Shown one piece after another: positions 3,275 through 59,230 of a stretch of 61,843 nucleotides of DNA. This DNA comes from Octopus bimaculoides. Taxonomy: Eukaryota. Location of the stretch: NCBI RefSeq assembly GCF_001194135.2, contig NC_068999.1, positions 35,499,878 to 35,561,720 of the forward strand, written 5' to 3'. The notes under the pieces are model-generated. The model made no database searches. It worked only from the letters and a program-made list of their open reading frames with translations, and had not been told where the DNA came from. Position 1 is the first letter of the stretch; every line of letters starts with the position of its first letter. The translations under genes and the position numbers were made by a program.

Positions 3275-3705
3275 TGCGTGGTAAAAAGCCTGCTTCCCAA
3301 TGACATGGTTCCGCATCTAGTCTCACTGTTTGGTATCTTGGGCAAGTGTCTTCTACTATAGCCTGGGGCTGACCAAAGTCTTGTGAGTGTATATGGTAGA
3401 TGAAAATCGAAAAAAGCCCGTCATATATAGATATGTGTATGTGTGTGTGCGTGTGTATTTGTGTATGTGTATGTGTGCGTGTGTATGTGTCTCTGTCCCC
3501 AAAACTGCTTGACAATCGGCGCTGGTTTGTTTACATCCTCGTAACGTAGTGGTTCGGCAAAAGAGACCGATAGTATAGGTGCCAGACTTAAGAAAAAAAT
3601 GTACTGGGAGCGATCCATTCGACAAAATTTCTTCAAGACACTGCCCCAGCATTGCCGCAGTCTGTTGAATGGAATAGATAAAAGAGTAACGATAAAAGAT
3701 ATCAG
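3275..3705 (+). mobile_element. SINE family A copy
   Basis: Collinear with 35935-36340. Confidence 0.85.
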
Positions 3706-5530: not shown

Positions 5531-5968
5531 TAATAATGATTATAAATGTGAAGAAATCAATGAAAGTTTTATATAGGGGTACTTCAAACAAAATTACAAA
5601 CTGTAGAGTGACTAATCCACGCTAAAATACCAACATTGAGGACCGACAAGTTTATAAATTCTCGCTTTCAAATGTTTTCTCCAAGCAATCCAGGGACGGG
5701 AAAACATACGTCAGTAACCCTTCATGAAATGGCCAAAACCATTTGCTGACAATAGCTGTACCGTAGGTCAGCAAAACAACAATTGAAACTGCTGGTTATA
5801 TTATTTCTGGTTATGAATGAATATCCAACTGGTTATACTTTTCCGAGTGGGCCACGATGTATAAATCAGAAGAGTCCAACAGGAAAGAATGACATCATCC
5901 AGAAAAGACGAACATATGACAGATTATTTAAAAGAATATTCAAGAAAATCTACATAGAAAATATATAG

Positions 5969-6190
5969 TATTGGGTTGTCCGGAAAGTTCGTGCCGATTT
6001 TCCAAAAGGTTCTTCTCACTCAACTCATGTGATACCCAAACATCGTAGCGATTTCTGTACCCAAGCTTTACCAGGTGCTCATGAACGACAGATTTTGATA
6101 GGTTGAGGCTTTCTGCTACAAATCCTTTGCAAAGTACAATTTGTTGACCGTCTGACCAGAGGGAATCCAGTGGATGTAGATGAATCCCTT
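5969..6190 (-). mobile_element. Mariner remnant with one TIR
   Basis: TA-TTGGGTTGTCCGGAAAGTTCGTGCCGATTT TIR-like end. The minus strand encodes SKSVVHEHLVKLGYRNRYDVWVSHELSEKNLL. Confidence 0.75.
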
Positions 6191-11108: not shown

Positions 11109-11784
11109 GAGTTAATATAAGGATAAGCAAGTTGGGCAAGTCGTGATATGTATATATACATACATATACATATATGTGTATGTGTGTGTGTATGCATCTA
11201 TACATGCATACATACATACATACACACATACATATATATATATATGATAGTTTGGATTTTAACTACTCCTTCTTGCGGTTTAGGTGTCAGATTATGGCCA
11301 TCTTTTATGTGTTTAAACGTACAATGTATTTATAATGAATAATACATAGTCTAATGACTACTTTTTCTACACGCTAGGCCACGGTGGTAAAAAAATTTTC
11401 TAAATAATATTTTACTACCCTGAAATTTATATATATATACACTGGTTTGTATCTGTCGAAACCAATGTGAGTGCTCAATATAGAGGTATGTTTTTATTGC
11501 AACTGTAAAGCAGATTGCCTTGCGTTGTGTGTGTCTTAGCTTGTTTGTTTCCATCGATACTTCCAACCGCTTCTTGGCAACAGTATTGCCTTAGCGGTTC
11601 GGCATATGAGAACCGATAGAATTAGTATCATACTTCAAAAAATAAATTCTGGAATTGACTTGTTCGACCAAAAGAGAAACGGAACAGCTAAAAGCCTACA
11701 GTAAAATTGAAGTAAACACCGTTCAGATAGTAATGGAATGTAATCACCCGAAGGCTAGCATTATAACGCTATAAACTATAACGC

Positions 11785-12955: not shown

Positions 12956-14299
12956 ATACATACATACATATACATATATGTGTATATACATCTGTACATA
13001 TATGTGTGCGTGTGTGTTTGTATGCGCATATGTGTGTATGTGTGCTTATGTGTTTGTGGTGTTTGTTTTTATTTGTATGTATGCATGTATGCATGTATGC
13101 ATGTATTTATGTATGTATGTAAAGTGCGAAACACGTCATTCCACGCTGTGCTGACAGACCGTGCTTTGTATTGGGTCTTCGTTCGTTGAATCATGTAATT
13201 CGTTTTGTAATGTGATGGAGGGCACGTGTTGGGAACATCAGAACTTCACATGAGGAACCAGTTAAGGACTTTTAATGGCAACAATGTGCAGCTTTATGTA
13301 AGGGAACACACACACACACACACACAACAAGAACAACGAACAACTGCGCACGACTGAGCGAGTCTCTGGGCAGTCGCTTGACTTTGTAGAAATCACAACC
13401 CCCATCCCTTAAATCACACGGTTATTGCTGTCTATAAAAAAGGAAGAATGTTTTGAAAAATGTTATTCTAAAATAAGTCGGGTGTATGTGAAAGACAGGC
13501 TGGTTACGATAGAGAAGGTATTTGATATTGGTTTAGTTCTGAGAGATCGGGGCTATCCTAAGTTTAAAGAGTAACAATGGCAGGAATATCAAAACCTATC
13601 CGCATTCATATGTAAAGAGAAACAAACAGATATAATAGCAGCTACAACAATCTAAGATCGACAACAACAACATAGTGTTATTATTATGACACTATGTAAA
13701 TGAATTTTTATTTATTTATTCATTTTATCTTTGGTCAGTAAGTGTTATTTCTTATTTGTTTCTATCTAGAAATCAAAAGAAATGAAAACTATTCCCTTCG
13801 AACTTTGCTTTTGTGACCTGGACCTAAATGTTTTTAAACCGACCTCTTTTCCATTACATTTCAAACATATTCAGCATTGAGTTGCTGAAGCAGAAATATC
13901 ATTATGGCAAATATTCTGTTCGATGCCACAGATTTGCTTGTCAGTTGCTTGACCTTAACCACTTGAAAATGTCCCTTAGTGGCTGACAATATGTGCATCT
14001 CGGATGATGAGCAGGAGTAGTAGGGGAGCATCATAGCCATGTGTTGAGAGGGATTCTTTGGGTTTTGAACAAAAGTAACAAAAGCTAAGTTTGAAGAAAA
14101 TATTAGCAATTTTCCATACTTTCTAAGGGTAAGCAATTAGGAAATCACAGATGCTACTCAAGGACAAAAATCGTATTGCATAGTATAATCAATGACATAA
14201 AAAGAATAACAATAACAATTAATAATAAACAATGATAAAACAATAAAGTCAATCACATTAATAATTAATATCAACACCGTCATTATAATAATTATTTCT

Positions 14300-14735
14300 A
14301 CTACAGATGCAAGGCCAGAAATTTTGAGGAAGGGTGTTTGTTGATTACATCGACTTCAGTGCTCAACCGGTACTTATTTCATCGACCCCGTGAGGACAAA
14401 AAGAAAATCGACCTCGGCGGATTTTGAACTCACAACTCGAAGACGAACGAGATATTGCTAAGCATTTTGTCCAGCGTGCTAATGATTCCGCAAGCTCACC
14501 GCCTTAATAATAATAATAACGGTCTCAAATTTTGGCACAAGGCCAGCAAGCTCGGGGGACGGGATAAGTCGATCACATTGACCCCTGTACTCAACTGGTA
14601 CTTATTTTATCGACCCCGAAAGGATGAAAGGAAAAGTCGACATCAGCGGAATTTGAACTCAGAGCATAAAGACGGACGAAATGCCGCGAAGAATTTTGCC
14701 CCGCATGCTAACAATTCTGCCAGCTCTCCACCTTC
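14300..14735 (-). mobile_element. Two tandem SINE family B copies
   Basis: Two reverse-complement copies of 48353-48520 separated by (TAA)n. Confidence 0.85.
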
Positions 14736-14898
14736 ATAATAATATTAATAATAATAATAATATTCTCTAGAACAATACTCTGTGCAAAACCAAATATATG
14801 GCAAACTTGTCATAATATCAACTTGAACTTGTTATCTCTTGAGGTCTTTGGGGGAAGACTTGGAGTCGACTGGTACAAGTACAAAGCAAAAGCCAACC

Positions 14899-14972
<74 letters not shown>

Positions 14973-15969: not shown

Positions 15970-16140
15970 ACCTTAGGAATGAGAACCAGGTTCGAAATTT
16001 CCCCAAGACATCTGATGAAGGCTGGAGGGTATATCAGCCGAAACATTGTGTTAACAACAAACAAGATCAGGACAAATATCCGTCAAATGTAAATAATGTA
16101 AATAATGTACATAATTCCTCATCTCTTAAATACAGAAGTA
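15970..16140 (+). mobile_element. Headless copy of the HHR-bearing repeat (Penelope-related, inferred)
   Basis: Near-identical to 9315-9406 (GGCTGGAGGGTATATCAGCCGAAAC...GACAAATATCCGTC). Preceded by (GAA)n rather than a tRNA head. Confidence 0.65.
16007..16052 (+). ncRNA. Minimal hammerhead ribozyme motif, probably inactivated
   Basis: GACAU-CUGAUGA-A-GGCUG-(10 nt)-CAGCC-GAA-ACAU-U-GUGUU. Helix III ACGU is mutated to ACAU relative to the copy at 9340. Confidence 0.6.
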
Positions 16141-16220
16141 TATATATACCAGAGTAAGTACATAAATGTGAAACAAAGTGGAAGAAAATAGTGCTCAAAT
16201 CCCGGAGGTAGAGTAACATG

Positions 16221-16345
16221 CTTTATTAATAAAGCTGCAAAGACATCCCAAAAGCTATAAGTCAGAGCTTCATATTCCCGATGAATGGGAACGTGAAACT
16301 CAGAGGAATAGATTTTGTGATGTCTTTGTAGCTTTATTAATAAAG
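16221..16345. repeat. Diverged inverted repeat homologous to 30813-30950
   Basis: Arms 16221-16279 and 16287-16345. Shares the upstream GAGGTAGAGTAA..TGCTTTATT and the CCGATGA..GGGAACGTGAAACTCAGAG core. Confidence 0.8.
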
Positions 16346-16825
16346 TGTATATATGCATAAAAGCTGCACACTGTGTGGACTTTTAAGCTACCTCTTGCCA
16401 CCTAAAACTAAAGAGAGCTAGATAGCTTAACTATAAACGTCTATAATGGCTATTTTCCCCAGTAGTGTCTGATCAGACGTCAAGGACGGGTGAGAATTAA
16501 TTATGTAATGCAATCATTCTATTATCTCTGTCCCAAGTTGAATTTAAACTGTTGGCCAATTTATCCCAACATTATTATCTCGACGTAAAATTAACGAAGT
16601 GACTGTCATTTTGCTTCACCTTGATCTCTGGCGTCATCTGACAAACACCAACGAAGATGGCTAGAAATAGCAACGCAAATGGTTTAAAATTAGGTCCTAA
16701 TACTGGATGTTCAAGAACCAAATGTATCTCGGATAATTCTGATTCCAAAATGTATAATATGCCTATGTAGACCAAATGTAAATTGAGTTTCAGGTGTCCC
16801 AGATAGATAGAATTTCGCTTTTATG

Positions 16826-16859
<34 letters not shown>

Positions 16860-17335
16860 TACTGCGATGTTTTTCTTTGTTTTGTTAAGCTGCGTCGATT
16901 TTACACTTCTGTAAATAGTAATAATAGCATTTCATAAGAGATCACTACGCAATGACTAAAGAAAATAGTCTAATAATGGGGTATATAAGCTCTCGACGGA
17001 AAAAAGTGGGTTTACCCGAACGCATGAGACTCGAACCCACACCTCCTTGTTTTCGCGGCAATCGTGACAAAATTACGCTAGCGCATAACCTGCTTCATTC
17101 CGTCGGATTTAAGAACTATAATTCGTAGTGTTGTTTTTAGAAACAAACTTTCATGTGCTTGTGCTGCGATATCTTTTTGTTAAGTAGCATCGATTTTTAC
17201 AGTTCTAATAATAGTATTTTATAAGCTTATAGCTTATAAGCAATCACCGCGCAATAACTAAAGAAAATAGTGTAATAATGGGGCATATAAGCCCTCGGCG
17301 GAAAAAAAGTAGGTTTTCCCGTACGCGTGATATAT
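16860..17335 (-). repeat. About 300-bp tandem unit (1.6 copies) containing a tRNA-like Pol III module
   Basis: 16860-17030 repeats at about 17161-17330. The minus strand has TAGCGTAATT, GGTTCGAGTC and a T6 run. Confidence 0.6.
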
Positions 17336-29719: not shown

Positions 29720-30150
29720 CATACCCTTGAGAGTTCACACACTTTTGCCAGCAATTCTGCCTCTGCTGATAACATCTCTGGAAGACATTCAAATCCTTTT
29801 CCTTTCCAGCGTGGTTTTCAGTTTGGTGTGTTGTTCTTGACCAGAAAAGCATGAATTACGAGGTACATTCAAAATGTATCCAACTTCATTTTATCGCTGG
29901 CGTTCTCCGTATGTACAAATCCTCCATTAAAATGGAATGCACTGATCCTGTGCCCATTCCCACTTCGTGTGTAATTTCCTGGATTATTACACAACGCTCT
30001 TCCATGACTATTCCCCGAACCTTCTCAATCGGCACCTCGTTTCGGCTCGTGGATGGCCTACCAGAACGTGCCTCGCTCTCTACTGAGGTGTGGTCATGTT
30101 TGAATCGATTACACCACTCTTTGATCTGCGTTTTACTCATGGCATCATCG
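29720..30150 (-). mobile_element. Internally deleted mariner remnant
   Basis: HTH region MSKTQIKEWCNRFK..SVESEARSGRPSTSRNE joined to C-terminal [20 protein letters not shown]. Confidence 0.85.
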
Positions 30151-30257
30151 CCAAAGATCTGCTGAATCTTCTGGATAGTTTGAGCTTGAGTATCACTAAG
30201 TTTTTATCAAAACTTGATGCAATATATCTGCTCAGCGAGTAGCCTTTATCAATGTCC

Positions 30258-35934: not shown

Positions 35935-36340
35935 GGCACTGGAATGGCTGTGTGGTAAGTAGCTTGCTTACCAACCATATGGTTCCGGGTTCATTCCCAC
36001 TGCGTGGCAACTCGGGCGAGTGTCTTCTGCTATAGCCTCGGGCCGACTAAAGCCTTGTGAGTGGATTTGGTAGACGGAAACTGAAAGAAGCCTGTCGTAT
36101 ATATGTATATATGTGTGTGTGTGTATATGCTTGTGTGTCTGTGTTTGTCCTCCAAACATCGCTTGACAACCGATCGTAGTGTGTTTACGTCCCCGTAACT
36201 TAGCGGTTCGGCAAAAGAGACCGATAGAATAAGTACTAGACTTCCAAAGAATAAGTCCTGGGGTCAATTTGCTCGACTAAAGGCGGTGCTCCAGCATGGC
36301 TGCAGTCAAATGAGTGAAACAAGTAAAAGAGTAAAAGAAG
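35935..36340 (+). mobile_element. tRNA-derived SINE family A, full-length
   Basis: A/B boxes TGGTAAG and GGTTCATTCCC, an internal (TA/TG)n and a tail CTCCAGCATGG..GTAAAAGA. Other copies at about 3275-3705+, 9120-9495-, 17560-17915-, 29520-29655+, 42430-42570+, 45790-46007-, 47675-48080+, 52151-52287+, 53025-53462+, 55428-55890+ and 58807-59230+. Confidence 0.9.
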
Positions 36341-37047
36341 CAACACAACACTAAATTGACAATTATGCAAGTTAAAGAGAAAATAAATTGAATTTTTTAA
36401 ATATCCCAATTGTTTAAAAACAGCTTATCAAGGTGTGAATCATTCGATAAAACATTAATAAACATCGGNNNNNNNNNNNNNNNNNNNNNNNNNNNNNNNN
36501 NNNNNNNNNNNNNNNNNNNNNNNTGAGGGTATGTGGAGGGGAGGGGAGGGGGGGGAAGAGGATGGGGAAAAGAAGAGGAGGGGAGGAGAAGAGAAGGGGA
36601 AGAAGAAGAGAAGGGGAAGAAGAAGAGAAGGGGAGAAGAAGAGAAAGGGAAGAAGAAGAGGGGAGGAAAGAAGAGGAGGTAGATGAGGGTGAGGAAAAGG
36701 AAGACGAGGCGGGGAAGAGGAGGGGATGAAGGGGAGGAGAGGAGGAAGATGAGGCAACGCCTCATCACTTACTGTCTGCCTAAGAGACAGCAAATAGCAG
36801 CCAAATATCTCTACTGTCTTAAAAAAAGATCATACAGGATAATGTAGTCCTTGATACACAGTGCCTGAAAAACTACGGAATGGTTATGACTGAAATGCTT
36901 TAACTTCGCCCTGAATAACATAAAATAGCACAAAGGAAACAAACCTTTGTCTCGTAATTGGGACAGATATTATTTGAACTGTCCCAGACAGCCGAATATA
37001 TCTGGCCAGCAAGAAATTCAGCTTTGGCACCAGTTTATGATAGAAAA

Positions 37048-37085
37048 TATAACAGTGAGTTATCTGCCCGTGACCAGTCACGTGA
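37048..37085 (+). promoter_or_regulatory. Putative Pol II core promoter of the kinase
   Basis: TATAA at 37048-37052, CAGT initiator-like motif at 37075-37078 (27 nt later) and an overlapping GTCACGTGA E-box at 37077-37085. The ATG follows at 37114. Confidence 0.45.
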
Positions 37086-37113
37086 TTTAAACAAAAGTGA
37101 GCTGCTCAGAAAG

Positions 37114-38196
37114 ATGGCCAAGATTCAAAGATTAGCGGCGAAAGTGTATACGCATGCAAAATTGTTTCCACCTGGTGAGGTTTTAAGATCAAATGATGGA
37201 CATACAGAATTTTTGCTTGGAAAACTAGTCGGAACCGGCGGTTTTGGTTTAATTTACGATGTCATACGCGTTGAGAGTGAAACAGATGAGGAATATGTTG
37301 CTAAAATCGAACCAATCGCTAATGGCCCTCTCTTTAACGAATTTCATATATTGCAAAAACTTGGTCATCGGAAAACTATGGCTGATTATGCAAGAAATAA
37401 AGATTTGACACGTCATCTTGCGATACCGCAATTTGTAGCGGGAGGAATCCACGATTTCCAAGGGAAGAAATATCGATTCATAATTCTACCGAAATTCGGA
37501 GATGATCTGCGTAAAATATTTCAACGCTATGGATTTTTTCCGAATAAACGTTCAGTATATCTTATCGCAATTCAAATGCTAGACGCTCTAGAATATATCC
37601 ATCAACACGGCTATGTTCACGCTGATATAAAGGCGGGTAATATCTTGTTAGAAAGTAACAAATCAGTTAAAATTAAAAAAACAACTAAAGGATATTACCC
37701 GGTGATAGACAGGTTGTATCTGATAGATTATGGCTTGGCTGCGAAATATATCCAGAATAATAAACATAAGCCTTATTGTGAAGCTAGCAGAAAGGCTCAC
37801 CAAGGAACGTTGTTTTATACCAGCATAGATGCTCATAAAGGAGTAGCACAATCTCGAAGAGGGGACTTACAGAATCTAGGATTCTGTCTTCTTGAATGGC
37901 TTACGGGTAGTTTGCCTTGGAGAAAAAAAACAATTAAAGACAAAGTGAAAAAAAGCAAAGAGTTATTGATGTCCAGACTTTCCCGAGTTTCTGATGAATA
38001 TTTAAAAACCTATTTCAAATATGTTACCACTATGCGCTACGAAGAAAAACCAAATTATGAAGAATTGCGACTTTTATTCAATAAGGCTGTGAAGGGTATC
38101 GACATAACTGAAAAGAATGCAAGTACTATTTCCGAGAGAAAACGGAAACAATCACCTCTAAATCCAGTTTCAAAAAGAGCTAAGTATGATTGTTAA
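37114..38196 (+). CDS. Intronless VRK-family (vaccinia-related kinase / poxvirus B1-like, CK1 group) Ser/Thr kinase, 360 aa
   Basis: Uninterrupted ORF with Gly-loop GTGGFG, VAKIEPxxNGPLFNE, catalytic HADIKAGN, VRK-type DYG, HQGTLFYTSIDAH, SRRGDL, LPW and EKPNYEEL. The first ATG is at 37114 in a good Kozak context (AAGATGG); the track start at 36958 is a TTG. Orthology to VRK1 is not established. Confidence 0.92.
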   Translation: MAKIQRLAAKVYTHAKLFPPGEVLRSNDGHTEFLLGKLVGTGGFGLIYDVIRVESETDEEYVAKIEPIANGPLFNEFHILQKLGHRKTMADYARNKDLTRHLAIPQFVAGGIHDFQGKKYRFIILPKFGDDLRKIFQRYGFFPNKRSVYLIAIQMLDALEYIHQHGYVHADIKAGNILLESNKSVKIKKTTKGYYPVIDRLYLIDYGLAAKYIQNNKHKPYCEASRKAHQGTLFYTSIDAHKGVAQSRRGDLQNLGFCLLEWLTGSLPWRKKTIKDKVKKSKELLMSRLSRVSDEYLKTYFKYVTTMRYEEKPNYEELRLLFNKAVKGIDITEKNASTISERKRKQSPLNPVSKRAKYDC

Positions 38197-39849
38197 GTCC
38201 AAGTGATACAGAAAGTGTCTCGTAATATAAAAGAAAGAGAGAGAGAGAGAGAGCGAGAAAGTGTGTGTGTATGAGAGAGAGAGAGAAAGCGGGGAGAGAG
38301 ATACAGACAGACAAACAAAGAGACTGAGACACACACAGAGATAGAAAGGTTGGGAACGAAAAGCCACTGATCTCCTTGAAACTTCAACGAAATATAATTC
38401 AAATGGCAGAAAATAATAAGCGCAATAAATATGTAACAAACGAAGGTTTTTAAAATTACAGAGAGGACATAAATATTTCTTTTTTTTTTTTTTNNNNNNN
38501 NNNNNNNNNNNNNNNNNNNNNNNNNNNNNNNNNNNNNNNNNNNNNNNNNNNNNNNNNNNNNNNNNNNNNNNNNNNNNNNNNNNNNNNNNNNNNNNNNNNN
38601 NNNNNNNNNNNNNNNNNNNNNNNNNNNNNNNNNNNNNNNNNNNNNNNNNNNNNNNNNNNNNNNNNNNNNNNNNNNNNNNNNNNNNNNNNNNNNNNNNNNN
38701 NNNNNNNNNNNNNNNNNNNNNNNNNNNNNNNNNNNNNNNNNNNNNNNNNNNNNNNNNNNNNNNNNNNNNNNNNNNNNNNNNNNNNNNNNNNNNNNNNNNN
38801 NNNNNNNNNNNNNNNNNNNNNNNNNNNNNNNNNNNNNNNNNNNNNNNNNNNNNNNNNNNNNNNNNNNNNNNNNNNNNNNNNNNNNNNNNNNNNNNNNNNN
38901 NNNNNNNNNNNNNNNNNNNNNNNNNNNNNNNNNNNNNNNNNNNNNNNNNNNNNNATATATATATATATATATATACTCGTATATATAAATATATGTATGG
39001 TGGTTGTCTACTCCTTAAACAGAGTTTGACCACCTCCTGCACCTACACCTTAGCCCTTTCATGGCGTCTGATGTGGCTTTTTAAACCAGACAGTGTTTTG
39101 AAAAAAACACCCACACAGATTGCACCTCTGATTTGCACTACCAATACCTGCAAGTAAGTTCTGCTCATTGTGGATCCTAACATGTCTTTTAAGACCCCCA
39201 TTGGATATGTATATTCACATACTCACATATGTGTATGTATATATAATGTGTGTAAGTAAGTGTTTGTACATACAGAGAGCGTGTTTTCTTTCAAGGATAT
39301 ATTGATGGCTCGGTGTAATCTTTTTTCTTTATTGAAGATATTTGTTATAATTCCTTATTAGTCCATTGCTTAATTTCGAACAGTAGTATTCCTACGTCCA
39401 TTAGTTTTTCAAGACCTTTTCGTCCTCATCTTCTCAATGAAATGATTATAGTGGCGCGTCATTGCAGCGTTTTGTAGTAGACATCAAGGATTCATGGGAA
39501 TGATGTTACAACTGCCAATGACAGATTTTAAAATTTTTAACGGTTAACTTCAGGTTAAATTCAGAGGTTTTTTTGGGGGTTTTTGTCGCACATCCTACAT
39601 GTGTATGCTGGTTTGGGTCTGCATTTGGCTATGAATAAGGCTTCTATAGTTAGTCGTATTTTCTTTGTAATTTTATATCGGATAATAATTTTTTTCTAAA
39701 TAGTTTTGTCTCATATTCTTCGTAACATTTGTTGCTGTGAGATAAGCTTTAAGTTTAATGAATATGAAGAGACTGCAACCACAAAAAAAGGGGGGGATTT
39801 AGGTAAAACTTCTGAAGCCCAGTCTGGTGAGTAGCGTTGTATGATTGTA

Positions 39850-42574: not shown

Positions 42575-44275
42575 CACTGACCAAAGACCGATGATGACAG
42601 TTCTATTCCTTCATTAATTTATTTTTAGCAAAACTGCATAAATTTATTTTACATTTTACAGTTTATGTAGAATTGTTTCTCTTTCGAATGATATAGGCGT
42701 TATATATCTTTCTATAATTTGAATAATTTTAATGCGCAATTAATTGAAATGATTCAGAATTGTCGGCAAAATAAGTTTAAAACCGTACCAACATNNNNNN
42801 NNNNNNNNNNNNNNNNNNNNNNNNNNNNNNNNNNNNNNNNNNNNNNNNNNNNNNNNNNNNNNNNNNNNNNNNNNNNNNNNNNNNNNNNNNNNNNNNNNNN
42901 NNNNNNNNNNNNNNNNNNNNNNNNNNNNNNNNNNNNNNNNNNNNNNNNNNNNNNNNNNNNNNNNNNNNNNNNNNNNNNNNNNNNNNNNNNNNNNNNNNNN
43001 NNNNNNNNNNNNNNNNNNNNNNNNNNNNNNNNNNNNNNNNNNNNNNNNNNNNNNNNNNNNNNNNNNNNNNNNNNNNNNNNNNNNNNNNNNNNNNNNNNNN
43101 NNNNNNNNNNNNNNNNNNNNNNNNNNNNNNNNNNNNNNNNNNNNNNNNNNNNNNNNNNTATTGCGCTCAAAATATTGCAAAACTATCCTAGCCTTATGCA
43201 AAACTATCCTAGCCTTATGAACAGGGCAATTATCCTGCTGGAGGATAGATCCCGGTGGCATCTGATTATTTAAATATGGCGGCACATTTTCATTTACTAA
43301 TTGCAGATAGCCCACACTTTTCAGTCTGCCACCAACCTTAACAATTGGACCAACACCTAAGCTGCTGAACGCGGCCCACACCATTAACCCCGCCCCCACT
43401 TGCACCGTTTTCTTGACACACTTAAGATGGAATTCTTCAGTTGGACGGCATCTATCATAAGTCTTACCGTGTGATCCAAATATGCAGAAGCAGGATTCGT
43501 CGCTTCAGAGAACTTTTGACCAGTCTTCGGCCGTCCAGTCAATATGGCTTTTAACAAACTTGATCCGTTTCCGCCGATTCGTCTCAGAGATTATTGGTTT
43601 CTTTCGAGCGATCTGGCTGAACAATCCAAATTCTTTTAGGCGGTTTCTGACAGTTTGGCGATGTAAAGCTGTCAGTCCTATCAGATAATTGATCGCAAAT
43701 GTCCACTGCTGTTAGCATTCGGTTGCCTTCAGACAGCATATGAATTCGCCGATCCATGTATACTGTTGGTTTTGTCGGAGTGCCCGTTCTTTGCCGATCT
43801 TCGTATTGGCCAGTGGTTTGGTAGAGCTTCCATGCTTAAACAAAGCCATTTTGCTGCATCCTAATTGCTTGCTAATGTTCATGAAGGACACATTTTACTA
43901 ATGAAGCAACACGATCTTTAATCTAGTAACTGGTCTGATACTACGACGCTTCCCCATAACGAATTAATGTGTAACAATGCTCGATTATTAAACAAAACAG
44001 TGCAGTACGATCAGCCATATGACCACTCATTTGCTTTATTAATTTGCATAATTTTGGTACGGTCTTAAACTTATTTTGCCGACAATTTCTAATTATTTGA
44101 ATTAATTGCGCATTAAAATTATTCAGTTTGTAGAAAGATATATAACGCCCATATCATTCGAAAGAGAAAAAAATCTCTACATAAACTGTAAATGTTTTCT
44201 ACGGTTTTGTTAAAAATATAAGAATAAAGGAATAGAACTGTCATCATCGGTCTTAAGCTTATTTTGGCCTCTGTG
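42575..44275 (-). mobile_element. Tc1-family DNA transposon with about 200-bp terminal inverted repeats (TIRs) and a disrupted transposase
   Basis: TIRs at about 42584-42791 and 44054-44254. Transposase motifs WSKVL*SDES, MVWAAFS and LQQDNCPVHKA, with stops and frameshifts. Internal N gap. Confidence 0.9.
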
Positions 44276-44321: not shown

Positions 44322-46170
44322 NNNNNNNNNNNNNNNNNNNNNNNNNNNNNNNNNNNNNNNNNNNNNNNNNNNNNNNNNNNNNNNNNNNNNNNNNNNNNNN
44401 NNNNNNNNNNNNNNNNNNNNNNNNNNNNNNNNNNNNNNNNNNNNNNNNNNNNNNNNNNNNNNNNNNNNNNNNNNNNNNNNNNNNNNNNNNNNNNNNNNNN
44501 NNNNNNNNNNNNNNNNNNNNNNNNNNNNNNNNNNNNNNNNNNNNNNNNNNNNNNNNNNNNNNNNNNNNNNNNNNNNNNNNNNNNNNNNNNNNNNNNNNNN
44601 NNNNNNNNNNNNNNNNNNNNNNNNNNNNNNNNNNNNNNNNNNNNNNNNNNNNNNNNNNNNNNNNNNNNNNNNNNNNNNNNNNNNNNNNNNNNNNNNNNNN
44701 NNNNNNNNNNNNNNNNNNNNNNNNNNNNNNNNNNNNNNNNNNNNNNNNNNNNNNNNNNNNNNNNNNNNNNNNNNNNNNNNNNNNNNNNNNNNNNNNNNNN
44801 NNNNNNNNNNNNNNNNNNNNNNNNNNNNNNNNNNNNNNNNNNNNNNNNNNNNNNNNNNNNNNNNNNNNNNNNNNNNNNNNNNNNNNNNNNNNNNNNNNNN
44901 NNNNNNNNNNNNNNNNNNNNNNNNNNNNNNNNNNNNNNNNNNNNNNNNNNNNNNNNNNNNNNNNNNNNNNNNNNNNNNNNNNNNNNNNNNNNNNNNNNNN
45001 NNNNNNNNNNNNNNNNNNNNNNNNNNNNNNNNNNNNNNNNNNNNNNNNNNNNNNNNNNNNNNNNNNNNNNNNNNNNNNNNNNNNNNNNNNNNNNNNNNNN
45101 NNNNNNNNNNNNNNNNNNNNNNNNNNNNNNNNNNNNNNNNGTGTGTGTGTGTGTGTGTGGAGAGAGAGAGAGGGGAGTATGAAGACATTTTAAAATTTCT
45201 GAGCGAGAAGTAGTAACAGTACTACAGAGTAAAATCTCTTTCGTTTTATATATATATATATAACTACAAATAATATTTTCATAAACAAATCCGAAAGGCT
45301 TTACAAGTTATGGAGAGAAAGCTACTTTGGACGACTCAATATAATTACCTACGAAGCCGTTCGGGTTTGTTGATAAAAGTATTATTTATGTAGAACTGAG
45401 ACAGTTTAAGTATATATTAACTAAATTTGATTGAAATTGATCGGTGAGGATTTGACCAATTAGATTACACAGCAAGGAGCTGTGTAAGCGTCGATGTGTG
45501 AGTTCGATTCCACCTGAAGTTAGCTTATCATTTTTCAGTCAATTGTTTATATTTAAAAAATTGTCGCTTCAAATCGGAGGATAAATATCACAACGATATA
45601 TATTATACAGTTATTGTTATATATATAAATAATCTTTTATGTTTTTGTCATTAGGCCATGTTAAGAAGCAGTCTTGAAGAATTATAGTCGAATAAATCTA
45701 TCCCGGTTGTTTTAGTTTTTTTTAAGTCCGTTACTTATTCTTCCGGACTCTTTTCCTGAATCTCTGTTACATGGAGGTAATCACACCAACATCAGTTGTG
45801 AAGTAGTGGGTGGAGCAAATACAGACACCAAGATGCACATACACATATATACGATGAGCTTCTTTCAGTTTCCGTCTGCCAAATCCAATCACAAGGCTTT
45901 GGTACACCCGAGGCTAAAGCAGAAAACACTTGCCCATGGTATCATGCATTGGAACTGAATCTGGAACCATGTGTTTGGGAAGCAACTTTCTTACCACAGA
46001 GCCACGCTAGCAAGGACATAGTGTTGCGTGTCTTTGCTAGCAATTGATATTAACATAATACTGCCAGGAATGTGTTTGATATACAAATTGCTCTTGCCAA
46101 TAGCGTAACACCTCTAAAGTTTGTGGGTATTTAAGCAATGCGTTCGGGGAAAGTTGATGGCATGGACATG

Positions 46171-47674: not shown

Positions 47675-48080
47675 ATAGGTTGTGTGGTAAGAAGCTTGTT
47701 TTCCTACCACATGGCCCCGGGTACAATCCCACTGCGTGGTACCTCGGACCTCGTCTATAATCTTGGGCAGCAACTGAAAGAAGCCGTAGTTCATGTGTGT
47801 GTGTGCGCGCGCATGCGTATGTATATGCGTGTGCGTCTTTATGTTTGTTAGTGTGTGTGTGTGTCTTTGTGCTTGTCCCCCACAACCGCTTCACAACCGG
47901 TATTGGTGTATTTACGTCCCCGTAACTTCGTGGCTCGGTATAAGAGGCCGACAAAATAAATACCAGGCTCAAAGATTATACATAAATAACGGGGTCGATT
48001 CATTCAACTAAAAATTCTTCAAGGCAGTGCCCCAGTATGGCCGCAGTGTGATGACTGAAACGAGTAAACAATTAATAATA
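47675..48080 (+). mobile_element. SINE family A copy
   Basis: Collinear with 35935-36340. Confidence 0.85.
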
Positions 48081-53024: not shown

Positions 53025-53179
53025 NGGCAGTGTGGTAAAACGTTTACTTCTTAACCACATGGTTCCGGGTTCAGTCCTACTGCATGGGCATCTTGGGCAA
53101 GTGTCTTCTATTATAACCTCGAGCCGACTTAAAACCTTGTGAGTGGATTTGGTGGACGGAAACTGAAAGAAGCCTATCG

Positions 53180-53241
<62 letters not shown>

Positions 53242-53462
53242 TGTGTGTGTGTGTGTCCGCCATCACTTGATAACCGATGCTGGTATGTTTATGTCCCTGT
53301 ATCATAACGGGTTGGCAAATAAACACCGATAGAGTAAATAAAGTACTAAGCTTACAAAGAATGAGTCCTGGGGTCGAATTCTTCGACTAAAAACTCTTCA
53401 AGGTGGTGCTCCAGCATGGCCGCAGTAAAAATGACTGAAACAAAAAAAAAACAATAAAAGAA
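53025..53462 (+). mobile_element. SINE family A copy
   Basis: Collinear with 35935-36340. Confidence 0.88.
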
Positions 53463-55427
53463 AAACACATACACAATCATACACAGTCATGCACATATAG
53501 TCACGCAGTCATACACACACACACGTACATACATATACACATAGTCACACAATCACCCACAAATAAACATTACACACACACACACGCGCAGAGTTACAAA
53601 CAGGCACATAGCCTCATGCACAGTCATACACATATATAGATAATTGTACACACAGCCGCACACATACCTGTTTAAAAAATGGCACAATTACAGTCACTCA
53701 CACACAGTGTTCTAGCAGTCACACTGAAAAACAACCATAAACACACTCTCTCGTTTATATGTCAACAGTGACACACACACACACATACACACACACACAC
53801 ACACACACAGAGTGAGTCTCACACAAGCACTTATTATTGTTGTCCCCTCAATTGCCGTTAACCCCCCCCCCTATTTATTTATTTATTGTTGTTTTTGTAC
53901 CAATGACTGCCCCTAACACGTGTTCGTCCTCCAGTGCCGTTTGTATTAAAGACGTGGGGCCGAGCTGGCAATGAGAGTTGGTCAGGTTCGAAGTAGGAGG
54001 TGTGTCGTGGCAATGAGGTGTTGGGGGGTGGGGGCTAGAAAGGGTGAGACCAANNNNNNNNNNNNNNNNNNNNNNNNNNNNNNNNNNNNNNNNNNNNNNN
54101 NNNNNNNNNNNNNNNNNNNNNNNNNNNNNNNNNNNNNNNNNNNNNNNNNNNNNNNNNNNNNNNNNNNNNNNNNNNNNNNNNNNNNNNNNNNNNNNNNNNN
54201 NNNNNNNNNNNNNNNNNNNNNNNNNNNNNNNNNNNNNNNNNNNNNNNNNNNNNNNNNNNNNNNNNNNNNNNNNNNNNNNNNNNNNNNNNNNNNNNNNNNN
54301 NNNNNNNNNNNNNNNNNNNNNNNNNNNNNNNNNNNNNNNNNNNNNNNNNNNNNNNNNNNNNNNNNNNNNNNNNNNNNNNNNNNNNNNNNNNNNNNNNNNN
54401 NNNNNNNNNNNNNNNNNNNNNNNNNNNNNNNNNNNNNNNNNNNNNNNNNNNNNNNNNNNNNNNNNNNNNNNNNNNNNNNNNNNNNNNNNNNNNNNNNNNN
54501 NNNNNNNNNNNNNNNNNNNNNNNNNNNNNNNNNNNNNNNNNNNNNNNNNNNNNNNNNNNNNNNNNNNNNNNNNNNNNNNNNNNNNNNNNNNNNNNNNNNN
54601 NNNNNNNNNNNNNNNNNNNNNNNNNNNNNNNNNNNNNNNNNNNNNNNNNNNNNNNNNNNNNNNNNNNNNNNNNNNNNNNNNNNNNNNNNNNNNNNNNNNN
54701 NNNNNNNNNNNNNNNNNNNNNNNNNNNNNCGGTGAGGTGGTGGTAATGATGATAGTGATGGTAGTGAGAATGGTGGTGGTGGTGGTGGTGGTGGTGGTTT
54801 TAGTGGTGGTGGTGGTGGTTGTGGTGGGGGTGTCAGTGGTGGTAGCTGTGCTTGTTGTAGTGGTTGTAGTGGTTGTGCGGGTAGACAAAGAGAGGTTAAC
54901 ACAGAGACAGCAGCAGAAATGCTTCTGTTCCATCCGTAATAACGATAGAGAAACAGTGAAGCAGGTTTCATCCTGGTGACTAAGCCTGCGAGAAATAGCA
55001 GCCAAACATCGTTGAAATTAAATGTACAAAATTCATCTGCTTTGGTGGGTGTTTTTTAAGGTAGCATATAATGCAATGAAATCCTGAATAAAAGAGGGGC
55101 TGGTCAAGGCTGGGATAACTTTAATCATATGTTTATCGATCAGGGTTGCCCTGGAGGTTACCCAACAACATCAAAAAGGATAGGGGCGATGAAGATTATG
55201 AGAAGCGTGATGGCAGTGTTCGTTGTGATGTTGAGGATGATGATGGTTGTATAATCGCAGTTATAATACAAGCGTACGTGTGTCGCCAAGAGGCTTTAAT
55301 CTTTGTACACTAGAGTACGTACGTACACACACACACATATATATATACATATCTGCATACATATACATACATACGCATACACACACATATACAAACGCGC
55401 GTGCGCGCGCATATATACATGTACATA

Positions 55428-55585
55428 GGCACAGGCGTGATTTGTTGTAAGAAGCTTGCTTTCCAACCACATGGTCTCCGGTTCAGTCCCACTGCATGGT
55501 ACCTTGAGCAAGAGTCTTCTGCTATACCTTCGGGCCGACCACAGCCTTTTGAGTTGATTTAATAGACGGAAACTAAAGAAGCCCG

Positions 55586-55625
<40 letters not shown>

Positions 55626-55890
55626 GACGGGCTTCTTAAGTGTGTGCATGTGTGTGTATGTGTGGGGGTTTTTGGTCTGTGTTTGTCTCCCACTCCGCTT
55701 GACAACCAATGCTAGTGTGGTTTCATCCCCGTAATATAGCGGTTCGGTAAGAGAAGGCTGATAGAAGAAGCACAAGGCTGGAAAAAAAAAAGTACTGAAG
55801 CCGATAGATTCTAACAAAGAAGATTTTTATAGGCAGTGCCCTAGCATGTTCATAGTTTAATAATTGAAATAAGTAAAAGATAAAAGAAAT
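55428..55890 (+). mobile_element. SINE family A copy
   Basis: Collinear with 35935-36340. Confidence 0.85.
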
Positions 55891-58806: not shown

Positions 58807-58970
58807 AGGAGTGGCTGTGTGTGTGATAAGAAGCTTGCTTCCCAACCACATGGTCCCGGGTTCAGTCGCACTGCGTGGCAACTTGGGCAAATGACTTCTA
58901 CTATAGCCTTGGGCCGACCAAAGCCTTATGAGTGGATTTGGTCGACGGAAACTGAAAGTAGCCCATCGTA

Positions 58971-59016
<46 letters not shown>

Positions 59017-59230
59017 CACCATCGCTTGACAACCGATACTGGTGCGTTTACGTTCCCGCAACTTAGCGGCTCGGAAAAAGTAAACGATAGAATAAGTACC
59101 AGGTTTACAAAGAATAAGTCATGGGGGGGGGGGCGATTTCTTCGACTGAAATAAAGAAAGACCTTTCAAGGCAGTGCTCCAGCATGGCCATATTCAAATA
59201 ACTAATACAAATAAGAGAATAAAAGAACAA
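58807..59230 (+). mobile_element. SINE family A copy
   Basis: Collinear with 35935-36340. Confidence 0.88.

What the first reader, a model, noticed from the sequence alone, without database searches (positions are those of the whole stretch)
37114..38196. Isolated intronless, intact VRK/B1-like kinase: retrogene or virus-derived gene
Seen: the only long real ORF in the window, with all catalytic motifs intact and no introns. It sits in about 1.3 kb of unique sequence between repeats, whereas every TE ORF nearby is decayed, suggesting selection or recent arrival. Established: animal VRK1 genes are typically multi-exon, and VRK1 and poxvirus B1 both phosphorylate BAF, which binds foreign DNA and pre-integration complexes. 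By eye some stretches recall B1 (KIEPxANG, KRSVxLI, PNYxE) and others VRK1 (GPLF, YIH, TSIDAH). Inference: a retrocopy or an endogenised large-DNA-virus kinase, perhaps modulating BAF in a TE-rich genome.
Basis: partly seen in the sequence, partly recalled or inferred. Interest (0 to 1): 0.72.

Follow-up and report, generated by a model that had tools for sequence, protein, structure and literature searches.

The report
Intronless octopus VRK kinase gene
This is an intact, conserved octopus gene for a VRK-type nuclear protein kinase, one of a cephalopod-wide family of intronless VRK genes that most likely descends from the ordinary multi-exon molluscan VRK1 by an ancient retrocopy, not from a virus and not recently.

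Summary
Window 37114-38196 (+) is a 360-codon ORF and the only real long ORF in 61.8 kb. It encodes a complete VRK-family kinase with all catalytic residues, and its AF2 model matches human VRK1/VRK2 (TM 0.86-0.90).

The gene is not a recent or isolated arrival:
- It is the syntenic orthologue of a 359-aa single-exon gene in O. vulgaris and O. sinensis, with an orthologue in Argonauta.
- It is under purifying selection (pN/pS 0.43, p=3.5e-4).
- Its 156-nt upstream block is more conserved than the CDS.

It belongs to a cephalopod-only family of at least three lineages. All 10 genes checked are single-exon. Bivalve and gastropod VRK1 have 9-11 or more coding exons. No long canonical cephalopod VRK1 turned up.

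Evidence on origin favours a molluscan VRK1:
- Profile-search ranking, slow-reference and recoded ML placements, and N- and C-terminal segments absent from poxvirus kinases all point that way.
- 20-state ML alone cannot reject a poxvirus affinity; that signal fits long-branch and compositional attraction.

Best reading: an old retrogene-derived VRK paralogue, fast-evolving, with a clade-specific 12-aa β-hairpin insertion. Modest interest.

The parts
37114..38196 (+). Complete single-exon CDS (360 aa plus stop) of a VRK-family Ser/Thr kinase, cephalopod clade A
   Evidence: ORF. Pfam Pkinase. PDB VRK2/VRK1 at 1e-65. 89% aa identity to the O. vulgaris/O. sinensis single-exon orthologue. pN/pS 0.43, Fisher p=3.5e-4. 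AF2 pLDDT 88. Foldseek top 50 are all human VRK1/2.
37231..37248 (+). Glycine-rich ATP loop GTGGFG (residues 40-45)
   Evidence: G40, G42, G43, F44 and G45 are invariant in the 10-member cephalopod alignment and nearly invariant in 60 VRKs.
37303..37305 (+). Catalytic lysine K64 (VAK of β3); its partner, the αC glutamate E76, lies at 37339-37341
   Evidence: K64 and E76 are invariant in A1. E76 is invariant in A2.
37618..37641 (+). Catalytic loop HADIKAGN (residues 169-176; D171, K173, N176)
   Evidence: Aligns with HGDIKASN of human VRK1/2. H169, D171 and N176 are invariant in 60 VRKs.
37666..37701 (+). Clade-A-specific 12-residue basic insertion (VKIKKTTKGYYP, residues 185-196) between the catalytic loop and DYG
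   Evidence: Present only in the window, O. vulgaris, the third Octopus-like species and Argonauta clade A. Absent from clade B, the third group and all other VRKs. Modelled as an extra β-hairpin, strands 185-190 and 193-198, pLDDT about 79-84.
37726..37734 (+). DYG metal-binding motif (residues 205-207), the VRK variant of DFG
   Evidence: D205 and G207 are invariant. Aligns with DYG of human VRK1/2.
38137..38184 (+). C-terminal basic clusters RKRK...KRAK (residues 342-357), a bipartite-NLS-like tail
   Evidence: The RKRK and K[KR].K clusters are conserved in all four clade-A proteins. The region is disordered in the AF2 model. The nuclear-import role is inferred.
36958..37113 (+). Conserved proximal upstream block (putative core promoter / 5' UTR). 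It holds the palindromes GGGACAG...CTGTCCC (36960-36985) and GTGACCAGTCACGTGA with an E-box (37070-37085), and GAGTTATCTGCCCGTGAC (37057-37074)
   Evidence: 152/156 = 97.4% identical to O. vulgaris, against 93.0% for the CDS and 66-79% for the flanks. Conserved in the third species apart from a 19-nt indel that breaks the in-frame upstream extension. GAGTTATCTGCTCGTAAC and TCATGTGAT are recognisable upstream of the Argonauta orthologue. The function is inferred.
38197..38233 (+). Conserved 37 nt after the stop codon, ending in AATATAA (putative short 3' UTR)
   Evidence: 35/37 identical to O. vulgaris, and conserved in the third species.
38234..38345 (.). (GA)n/(GT)n microsatellite directly after AATATAA, at the same position in three Octopus-like species; a possible relic of a retrocopy poly(A) tail (weak)
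   Evidence: Alignment A4. No comparable tract follows the other family members.
36545..36754 (.). Purine-rich tandem repeat that bounds the unique interval upstream
   Evidence: TRF periods 17/33/50.

Best explanation
The ORF is a functional host gene for a catalytically competent VRK-family (CK1-group) Ser/Thr kinase. The window comes from an Octopus species close to O. vulgaris.

The gene is the 'clade A' member of a cephalopod-specific family of short (326-448 aa), entirely intronless VRK genes. The family has three lineages:
- clade A: a dispersed single copy, carrying a 12-aa β-hairpin insertion and evolving about twice as fast as clade B;
- clade B: inverted or tandem pairs in Octopus and Argonauta;
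- a third group on unnamed, probably non-octopod cephalopod sequences.

The family most likely arose when a processed mRNA of the ancestral multi-exon molluscan VRK1 was retrocopied in an early cephalopod. It then duplicated and, as far as the annotated octopod proteomes show, now stands in for a canonical VRK1.

Inferred mechanism:
- transcription from its own conserved 156-nt proximal region;
- nuclear import through the C-terminal RKRK...KRAK clusters;
- phosphorylation of chromatin and nuclear-envelope substrates of the VRK1 type, such as BAF and histones. Clade A would be a sub- or neo-functionalised paralogue.

Shown: gene integrity, orthology and synteny, purifying selection, family-wide absence of introns, VRK fold and motifs.
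Inferred: the retroposition event, loss of the parent gene, nuclear localisation, substrates.
For: Integrity and family membership.

Orthology and age:
- The same single-exon CDS is present in O. vulgaris and O. sinensis.
- More than 20 kb is collinear.
- Clade A includes Argonauta at 99% bootstrap.

Selection:
- pN/pS is 0.43 overall (p=3.5e-4) and 0.39 in the kinase core.
- dN/dS is 0.19 against Argonauta.
- The upstream block is 97.4% conserved.

Intron loss is family-wide. All 10 genes have a genomic span equal to the CDS. Mercenaria has at least 11 coding exons and Lottia 9, with matching 44- and 41-aa exons.

Monophyly of the cephalopod family: 82% with the CK1 outgroup and 98-100% without it.

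Molluscan affinity:
- In the family-profile search, members score at least 522 bits. The next roughly 23 hits are all molluscan VRK1 (377-344 bits), ahead of any other phylum. No poxvirus reaches the top 120.
- ML placement on slow-evolving references puts 99.7% of likelihood weight on or inside molluscs (93% with sponge and placozoan added).
- The method is validated by fly, springtail and nematode controls.
- After Dayhoff-6 recoding, molluscs get 0.57 and poxviruses 0.04.

Cellular-type extra-core segments absent from poxvirus kinases.

No long cephalopod VRK1 appears among all 79 hits or the top 120.

A poly(A)-ended contig for a third-group member (L009) shows that at least that relative is transcribed.

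Background on VRK1 and BAF: PMC3952857, PMC9175622.
Against: - With fast-evolving taxa in the reference tree, 20-state ML places the cephalopod clade with the fly and nematode VRKs, and the mollusc stem is 27-31 lnL worse.
- With slow references plus poxviruses, it goes to the poxviruses (LWR 0.86). After full optimisation the mollusc stem is 7.8 +/- 10 lnL worse, which is not significant.
- The poxvirus clade itself lands near the mollusc stem in the slow-reference scan, so that position is not highly specific.
- Absence of a canonical cephalopod VRK1 rests on protein databases searched through a word index, not on a genome-wide tblastn. Several unnamed long-form hits could not be assigned to a taxon.
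- No clear poly(A) tract or target-site duplication survives, only a (GA)n tract.
- There is no expression evidence for clade A itself. The short Logan contigs may be genomic.
- Substrates and localisation are untested.
Confidence: 0.72

Rival explanations
1. Virus-derived gene. The whole cephalopod VRK family descends from a kinase captured from a poxvirus-like or other large DNA virus in an early cephalopod, and later replaced the host VRK1.
For: - 20-state NJ and ML group the cephalopod clade with poxvirus kinases once other long branches are removed: NJ 65-84% and ML LWR 0.86. The best fully optimised placement is inside the poxvirus clade.
- The proteins are short, like viral kinases.
- VRK-like kinases also exist in invertebrate iridoviruses and entomopoxviruses.
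Against: - The preference is not significant (z=0.78) and disappears after Dayhoff-6 recoding (poxvirus LWR 0.04).
- Both groups are fast-evolving and FYMINK-enriched (0.34 and 0.43, against 0.30-0.31).
- The same trees misplace bona fide fly and springtail orthologues.
- Cephalopod-poxvirus identity (36-42%) is no higher than canonical VRK1-poxvirus identity (41-48%).
- The N-terminal KG[HY]KxAExF segment and the post-kinase G..KLxIP plus basic tail are shared with cellular VRK1 and absent from poxvirus kinases.
- No viral genes flank any copy.
- IMG/VR scans return only Turkeypox virus, at 39% identity.
Confidence: 0.07
2. In-situ intron loss. The ancestral VRK1 lost all its introns at its original locus, for example by recombination with its own cDNA, rather than through a retrocopy at a new site followed by loss of the parent gene.
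For: - No parental gene was found.
- No poly(A) tract or target-site duplications were seen.
- An unrelated intronless long-form VRK1 (P0117) exists on an unidentified eukaryotic contig, so complete intron loss in VRK1 has happened more than once.
Against: - The neighbours of Lottia VRK1 (an SH2/SOCS-box gene and an 899-aa protein) are not those of the octopod copies (GH18, FKBP_C and a 1936-aa protein). This is weak evidence from 10-kb flanks only.
- Simultaneous loss of 9 or more introns is the classic retrocopy signature.
Confidence: 0.13
3. Young, lineage-private retrocopy or recent arrival.
For: It is the only intact ORF in a repeat-rich window.
Against: - It has a syntenic orthologue in O. 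vulgaris and O. sinensis, with flanks diverged to the neutral level.
- An orthologue is present in a third species and in Argonauta.
- dS against Argonauta is saturated.
Confidence: 0.01
4. One coding exon of a larger spliced gene, or a gene with additional UTR exons.
For: Eukaryotic context. The frame is open for 156 nt upstream of the ATG. No transcript data are available for this species.
Against: - The protein aligns from Met1 with the N-termini of all family members and ends with the family's basic tail.
- A 19-nt indel in a sister species destroys the upstream frame.
- NCBI models in two species are this single CDS.
- UTR introns cannot be excluded.
Confidence: 0.05
5. Non-functional ORF preserved by chance (a pseudogene in waiting).
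For: pN/pS is fairly high (0.4-0.5) and the C-terminal tail is not significantly constrained.
Against: - The ORF is intact in four species spanning the Octopus-Argonauta split.
- pN/pS is significantly below 1.
- All catalytic residues are invariant.
- The upstream block is conserved.
Confidence: 0.02

Closest known systems
Metazoan VRK1 (vaccinia-related kinase 1; e.g. human VRK1 PDB 2LAV/3OP5, molluscan VRK1-like proteins)
   Same: - Kinase fold: Foldseek target-normalised TM 0.86-0.90.
- Motifs: G-loop, K64, E76, H.DIKA.N, DYG and TSIDAH.
- N-terminal KxxKxAExFxxGE segment and a C-terminal basic tail.
- 41-46% identity to molluscan VRK1 over the core.
   Different: - No introns, against 9-11 or more coding exons.
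- Short tail: 45 residues after the PxY motif, against 145-319.
- No terminal QTSPG motif.
- A 12-aa β-hairpin insertion before DYG.
- HAD in place of HGD in the catalytic loop.
- Much faster evolution and AT-biased amino-acid composition.
Human VRK2
   Same: It is the best single PDB sequence match (2.8e-65) and the best Foldseek hit.
   Different: VRK2 is a vertebrate-specific paralogue. The window protein's 45-residue tail is basic and not hydrophobic, whereas VRK2 has a C-terminal membrane anchor (own knowledge). The similar scores to VRK1 and VRK2 reflect shared ancestry, not orthology.
Poxvirus B1-type kinases (Yokapox, NY_014, Turkeypox, Wadden Sea poxvirus proteins retrieved here)
   Same: - VRK-type kinase core with DYG.
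- About 36-41% identity.
- Foldseek E of 3e-29.
- Intronless and compact.
   Different: - The viral proteins are about 300 aa, with 22-30 residues before the G-loop and 15-16 after the PxY motif.
- They lack the KG[HY]KxAExF segment, the KLxIP segment and the NLS-like tail.
- The window gene lies in syntenic host DNA.
Retrogene replacement / 'orphan' retrogenes (e.g. amphioxus SYCP1, PMC5803294; human orphan retrogenes, PMC3548309)
   Same: A single-exon copy of an otherwise multi-exon, conserved gene that persists under selection, while no intron-containing parent is detectable.
   Different: The event here is old and was followed by duplication into at least three lineages. Loss of the parent is not proven at genome level, and the classic hallmarks (poly(A), target-site duplications) are gone.

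Membership tests
VRK family (CK1-group protein kinases) | Protein-kinase domain that scores best against VRK1/2, not CK1 or other kinases | tested here: met
   Pfam Pkinase 4.4e-20. PDB: VRK2 2.8e-65 and VRK1 1.9e-64, against CK1 about 1e-27.
VRK family (CK1-group protein kinases) | Active-kinase residues: Gly loop, β3 Lys, αC Glu, catalytic Asp/Lys/Asn, and DYG (the VRK variant of DFG) | tested here: met
   G40-G45, K64, E76, H169/D171/K173/N176 and D205-Y206-G207 are all present and invariant in the cephalopod family.
VRK family (CK1-group protein kinases) | Three-dimensional fold of VRK1/2 | tested here: met
   AF2 pLDDT 88, pTM 0.86. The top 50 PDB matches are all human VRK1/VRK2, with target-normalised TM 0.86-0.90.
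VRK family (CK1-group protein kinases) | Phosphorylates BAF or histones; nuclear localisation | not testable with these tools
   Only an NLS-like RKRK...KRAK tail is visible. The substrates are inferred from VRK1 biology (PMC3952857).
Orthologue of canonical molluscan VRK1 | Phylogenetic placement within or sister to molluscan VRK1 | tested here: inconclusive
   Supported by the profile ranking, slow-reference ML (LWR 0.997) and Dayhoff-6 recoding. Contradicted by 20-state ML when other long branches are present. No alternative is rejected.
Orthologue of canonical molluscan VRK1 | Shared exon-intron structure and a long C-terminal tail ending in QTSPG | tested here: not met
   No introns, against 9-11 or more coding exons. 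The tail is 45 residues and lacks QTSPG.
Processed retrogene | Lacks all introns of the parental gene type | tested here: met
   Genomic span equals the CDS in all 10 family genes. Bivalve and gastropod VRK1 are multi-exon, with shared exon sizes.
Processed retrogene | Poly(A) remnant and target-site duplications | tested here: inconclusive
   Only a (GA)n tract follows AATATAA, 37 nt past the stop, conserved in three species. No comparable tract was found at other members. Target-site duplications were not searched, and none is expected at this age.
Processed retrogene | Intron-containing parent elsewhere in the genome, or demonstrable loss of it | tested here: inconclusive
   No long cephalopod VRK1 appears among the 79 hits or the top 120. 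No whole-genome nucleotide search was possible.
Poxvirus B1-type / endogenised viral kinase | Viral-type architecture (about 300 aa, minimal termini) and viral genomic neighbourhood | tested here: not met
   Cellular-type N- and C-terminal segments are present. The flanks are host DNA collinear between Octopus species, with only TE remnants. No viral genes lie next to any family member.
Poxvirus B1-type / endogenised viral kinase | Nests inside a viral clade in phylogeny | tested here: inconclusive
   20-state ML slightly prefers a poxvirus affinity (LWR 0.86), but the mollusc stem is only 7.8 +/- 10 lnL worse. Recoding removes the preference.

The most novel reading that the evidence does not exclude
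The whole cephalopod VRK family, including this gene, is not a descendant of molluscan VRK1. On this reading it is an ancient capture of a VRK/B1-type kinase from a large DNA virus, which then replaced the host's essential VRK1. That would be a virus-to-animal transfer of a core cell-cycle and nuclear-envelope kinase.
Probability: 0.07. Interest if true: 0.8.

Novelty: new member of a known kind. Interest (0 to 1): 0.3.

Why it matters
VRK1 is a conserved, usually essential regulator of BAF, chromatin and nuclear-envelope dynamics.

If cephalopods run this function entirely on intronless, fast-evolving retrogene descendants, that would be a clean case of retrogene replacement of a housekeeping kinase at the base of a major animal group. 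Subsequent paralogue diversification would add to the case; clade A carries a new β-hairpin next to the active site.

The case would bear on how cephalopod genomes were remodelled. It would also supply a natural VRK variant for structural comparison.

For the genome scan itself the message is more modest. This is an ordinary, already auto-annotated host gene ('VRK1-like' in O. vulgaris and O. sinensis). It is not an endogenous viral element or a young insertion.

The analysis also shows how long-branch and compositional attraction can mimic a viral affinity.

Tried and rejected
1. Exact-product look-up of the window protein found nothing on record, so there is no annotation or transcript for this species.
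2. The close-pattern IMG/VR scan found no viral relative. The profile scan found only the Turkeypox genome. tblastn against the phage collection gave only generic 25-32% kinase hits and is irrelevant.
3. Literature searches found nothing relevant: VRK1+cephalopod, vaccinia-related kinase+octopus, VRK+Octopus bimaculoides, VRK1+retrogene, and the SRR/ERZ accession numbers.
4. I tried to name the species behind P0002, P0008, P0191 and P0346, and behind the unassigned long-form hits. The cluster look-ups gave no names, apart from showing that P0413 is a coral protein. Shared-repeat blastn of the ENA contigs against octopod DNA found nothing outside the gene itself.
5. I used the Logan contigs L006-L008 as transcript evidence for clade A. 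They are collinear with the genome and break at microsatellites, so they may be genomic. This was rejected as expression evidence.
6. NJ and 20-state ML trees that include distant or fast taxa were rejected as a guide to deep origin, because the same trees tear the fly and springtail VRKs away from other arthropods.
7. AATAAA at about 38427 as a poly(A) signal is not conserved in O. vulgaris.
8. Micro-synteny between Lottia VRK1 and the octopod loci showed no shared neighbours. It is too limited to be decisive.
9. tRNA and Rfam scans of the window found nothing.
10. Pfam scans of ten TE-like ORFs gave only one domain above threshold.
11. The iridovirus VRK-like kinase seen in BFVD could not be added to the tree, because its sequence is not retrievable with these tools.
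Full report
**1. The observation**

Window 37114-38196 (+) is a 360-codon ORF (ATG to TAA). It is the only ORF of at least 150 aa in the 61.8-kb window that is not an assembly gap or microsatellite translation. At the window's 38.8% G+C, 360 stop-free codons have a chance of about 3e-11.

The product is a protein kinase (Pfam Pkinase 4.4e-20). Its best solved relatives are human VRK2 (2.8e-65) and VRK1 (1.9e-64), far ahead of VRK3 (6e-37) and CK1 (about 1e-27).

Every catalytic element is present: GTGGFG 40-45, K64, E76, HADIKAGN 169-176 and DYG 205-207. An AlphaFold2 model built on a 60-sequence alignment is confident (pLDDT 88, pTM 0.86). Its 50 best PDB matches are all human VRK1/VRK2, with target-normalised TM 0.86-0.90.

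The gene sits in about 1.5 kb of unique DNA. Upstream lie a gap, a purine-rich tandem repeat (36545-36754) and a ~400-bp interspersed repeat with at least 10 copies in the window. Downstream lie a (GA)n/(GT)n tract and a gap.

**2. Not isolated and not recent**

The closest database protein (P0001, 89% identity, 359 aa) is annotated 'VRK1-like' in O. vulgaris and O. sinensis. In both genomes it is encoded by one uninterrupted 1080-nt CDS. The window is collinear with O. vulgaris chromosome OX597832.1 from about 27.0 to 48.0 kb, at 73-90% nucleotide identity. It is therefore the syntenic orthologue in another, closely related Octopus species. A third species (Logan contigs, 82% aa identity) and Argonauta hians (P0003, 55%) also carry it. 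The four form a clade with 99% bootstrap.

Selection and conservation:
- Nei-Gojobori pN/pS is 0.43 against O. vulgaris (28 synonymous and 45 non-synonymous differences; Fisher p=3.5e-4).
- It is 0.39 in the kinase core and 0.60 (not significant) in the tail.
- dN/dS against Argonauta is 0.19, with saturated dS.
- The 156 nt directly upstream of the ATG are 97.4% identical to O. vulgaris. That is more conserved than the CDS (93.0%) or the flanks (66-79%).
- This block contains two palindromes, one with an E-box, that are partly recognisable in Argonauta.
- A 19-nt indel in the third species breaks the in-frame upstream extension, so ATG 37114 is the start.

**3. A cephalopod family of intronless VRK genes**

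Octopods have a second lineage, clade B. Its members are:
- O. sinensis: 356 and 326 aa, 5 kb apart on opposite strands;
- O. vulgaris: 326 aa, and at least 403 aa for a copy cut by the locus end, 9 kb apart;
- Argonauta: 448 and 360 aa, 2.5 kb apart and inverted.

A third group (P0191, P0008, P0346; 355-379 aa) comes from unnamed sequences. In all 10 genes examined the genomic span equals the CDS. One third-group contig ends in poly(A), so it is a transcript.

By contrast, Mercenaria VRK1 (535 aa) spans 25.9 kb with at least 11 coding exons. The Lottia VRK1 kinase region has 9 exons in 6.1 kb, with matching 44- and 41-aa exons.

The cephalopod family is monophyletic: 82% with the CK1 outgroup and 98-100% without it. 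Since the Octopus-Argonauta split, clade A has accumulated about twice as much change as clade B (0.25+0.33 against 0.16+0.14 substitutions per site). Clade A alone carries a 12-residue basic insertion (185-196), modelled as an extra β-hairpin between the catalytic loop and DYG.

No long, canonical VRK1 from any cephalopod appeared among all 79 hits of the single-sequence search or the top 120 of the family-profile search. Both searches did return the short forms from O. vulgaris, O. sinensis and Argonauta. A few unnamed long-form hits remain taxonomically unassigned.

**4. Cellular or viral origin**

Raw similarity gives no special link to viruses. Cephalopod-poxvirus identity is 36-42%, canonical VRK1-poxvirus is 41-48%, and cephalopod-mollusc is 40-46%, the highest.

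With the family profile, members score at least 522 bits. There is then a gap. The next roughly 23 hits are all molluscan VRK1 (377-344 bits), ahead of the first non-mollusc. No poxvirus kinase reaches the top 120.

IMG/VR scans return only the Turkeypox genome, at 39% identity.

Tree-based inference is treacherous here:
- NJ, and my own ML placement (Gonnet-derived Q plus Γ), put the family among other fast-evolving VRKs (fly and nematode). The poxvirus stem is 6.5-8 lnL worse and the mollusc stem 27-31 lnL worse.
- The same reference tree separates fly and springtail VRKs from crustacean and myriapod VRKs. It is a rate ladder, not a phylogeny.
- With slow-evolving bilaterian VRK1 references only, 99.7% of the likelihood weight falls on the mollusc stem or inside molluscs (93% with sponge and placozoan added).
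- The same procedure correctly sends fly, springtail and nematode VRKs to the arthropod branch (LWR 1.0, 0.93 and 0.85).
- Adding the four poxvirus kinases as the only other long branch pulls the family to them (LWR 0.86). After full optimisation the mollusc stem is only 7.8 +/- 10.0 lnL worse (z=0.78), and no alternative is rejected.
- Both groups are enriched in FYMINK residues (0.34 and 0.43, against 0.30-0.31). Dayhoff-6 recoding removes the attraction (molluscs 0.57, poxviruses 0.04), while the fly control stays correct.

Two characters outside the trimmed core point the same way:
- Cephalopod proteins keep the VRK1-type N-terminal KG[HY]KxAExFxxGE segment, with 37-41 residues before the Gly loop. 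Poxvirus kinases have 22-30 and lack it.
- They also keep a post-kinase G...KLxIP segment plus a basic tail, 41-147 residues after the PxY motif. Poxvirus kinases have 15-16.

Structure does not discriminate. Yokapox scores E of 3e-29 at 33% identity, against about 1e-31 at 34-38% for human VRK1/2.

I conclude that descent from molluscan VRK1 is the best-supported origin. A viral origin is unsupported but not formally excluded (about 7%).

**5. Mechanism**

Shown: an intact, conserved, selected, single-exon VRK-type kinase gene with its own conserved proximal upstream block.

Inferred:
- an ancient retrocopy of VRK1 mRNA, given simultaneous loss of 9 or more introns;
- later duplication;
- probable loss of the parent gene (retrogene replacement, as described for other genes in PMC5803294 and PMC3548309);
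- nuclear import through the RKRK...KRAK tail;
- VRK1-like substrates such as BAF (PMC3952857, PMC9175622). Clade A would be a faster-evolving, possibly specialised paralogue.

In-situ intron loss is a variant I cannot exclude. The limited 10-kb neighbourhoods show no shared neighbours between the Lottia and octopod loci.

**6. Novelty and verdict**

The gene is already auto-annotated as 'VRK1-like' in sister species. I found no paper on cephalopod VRKs.

It is a new member of a known kind, a retrogene-type VRK paralogue. The family-level pattern (all intronless, no canonical copy seen, clade-A insertion) is a modestly interesting evolutionary note, not a surprise for specialists. Interest is 0.3.

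Its interpretation is partly supported: the retrocopy reading holds, but the event is ancient and family-wide, and the viral and recent-arrival readings are not supported.

Noticed in passing
window 35945-36350 (copies e.g. at 3275-3689, 45716-46004, 47678-48068, 53026-53474, 55443-55797, 58820-59227): A ~400-bp interspersed repeat lies directly upstream of the gene. It has at least 10 copies in the window at 67-91% identity, and it also matches several places in the O. vulgaris locus. No tRNA-like or Rfam signature was found.
   Followed up: partly
window 29889-30203 (-): A short ORF fragment carries a Mos1-type transposase HTH domain (Pfam HTH_48, 9.5e-06), so it is a decayed mariner-like element. 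Nine other TE-looking ORFs gave no Pfam hit above the gathering threshold; the only other match, Transpos_assoc at 5943-6188(-), scored below it.
   Followed up: partly
window 36958-37113: The upstream block is more conserved than the coding sequence (97.4%). It holds two palindromes, GGGACAG..CTGTCCC and GTGACCAGTCACGTGA (E-box), and a GATA-like TTATCT. Parts are recognisable upstream of the Argonauta orthologue. It is a candidate promoter or 5'-UTR element of unknown factor specificity.
   Followed up: partly
window 38234-38345; L001 about 11115-11260: A (GA)n/(GT)n microsatellite sits at exactly the same position (after AATATAA, 37 nt past the stop codon) in three Octopus-like species. It has been positionally stable over a dS of about 0.14-0.21.
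   Followed up: partly
L016:3001-4494 (ENA assembly ERZ25072999, contig of 237,825 bp): A long-form VRK1 (P0117, 497 aa, with the terminal QTSPGL motif) is encoded by a single uninterrupted ORF on an unidentified eukaryotic contig. This looks like an independent case of an intronless VRK1, with no special affinity to the cephalopod family.
   Followed up: partly
L003:10001-11071 and 16092-17072; L004:10001-10981 and 19772-end; L014/L015:10001-11347 and about 13400-14900: Clade-B VRK genes occur as inverted or tandem pairs in O. sinensis, O. vulgaris and Argonauta. In Argonauta the same pair, with the same neighbours (a 1936-aa protein and an FKBP_C gene), appears on two contigs, so these are probably haplotigs or a recent segmental duplicate.
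   Followed up: no
phylogenetic scans (no window coordinates): When placed on slow-evolving VRK1 references, the chordopoxvirus kinase clade attaches near the mollusc/vertebrate junction (mollusc stem LWR 0.58, vertebrate VRK1 stem 0.20), not clearly with vertebrates. The origin of the poxvirus kinases is itself unresolved with these data.
   Followed up: no
window, whole: The window is a draft-quality scaffold with 24 N gaps totalling 5,825 bases and abundant microsatellites. Several apparent long ORFs are gap or microsatellite translations. No tRNA gene and no Rfam family reaches threshold anywhere in the window.
   Followed up: yes
window 42740-43405 (-), spanning the gap 42795-43158: By eye, the ORF flanking an assembly gap resembles the C-terminal part of a Tc1/mariner DDE transposase. 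Pfam gave no hit on the ungapped part, so this is unverified.
   Followed up: partly
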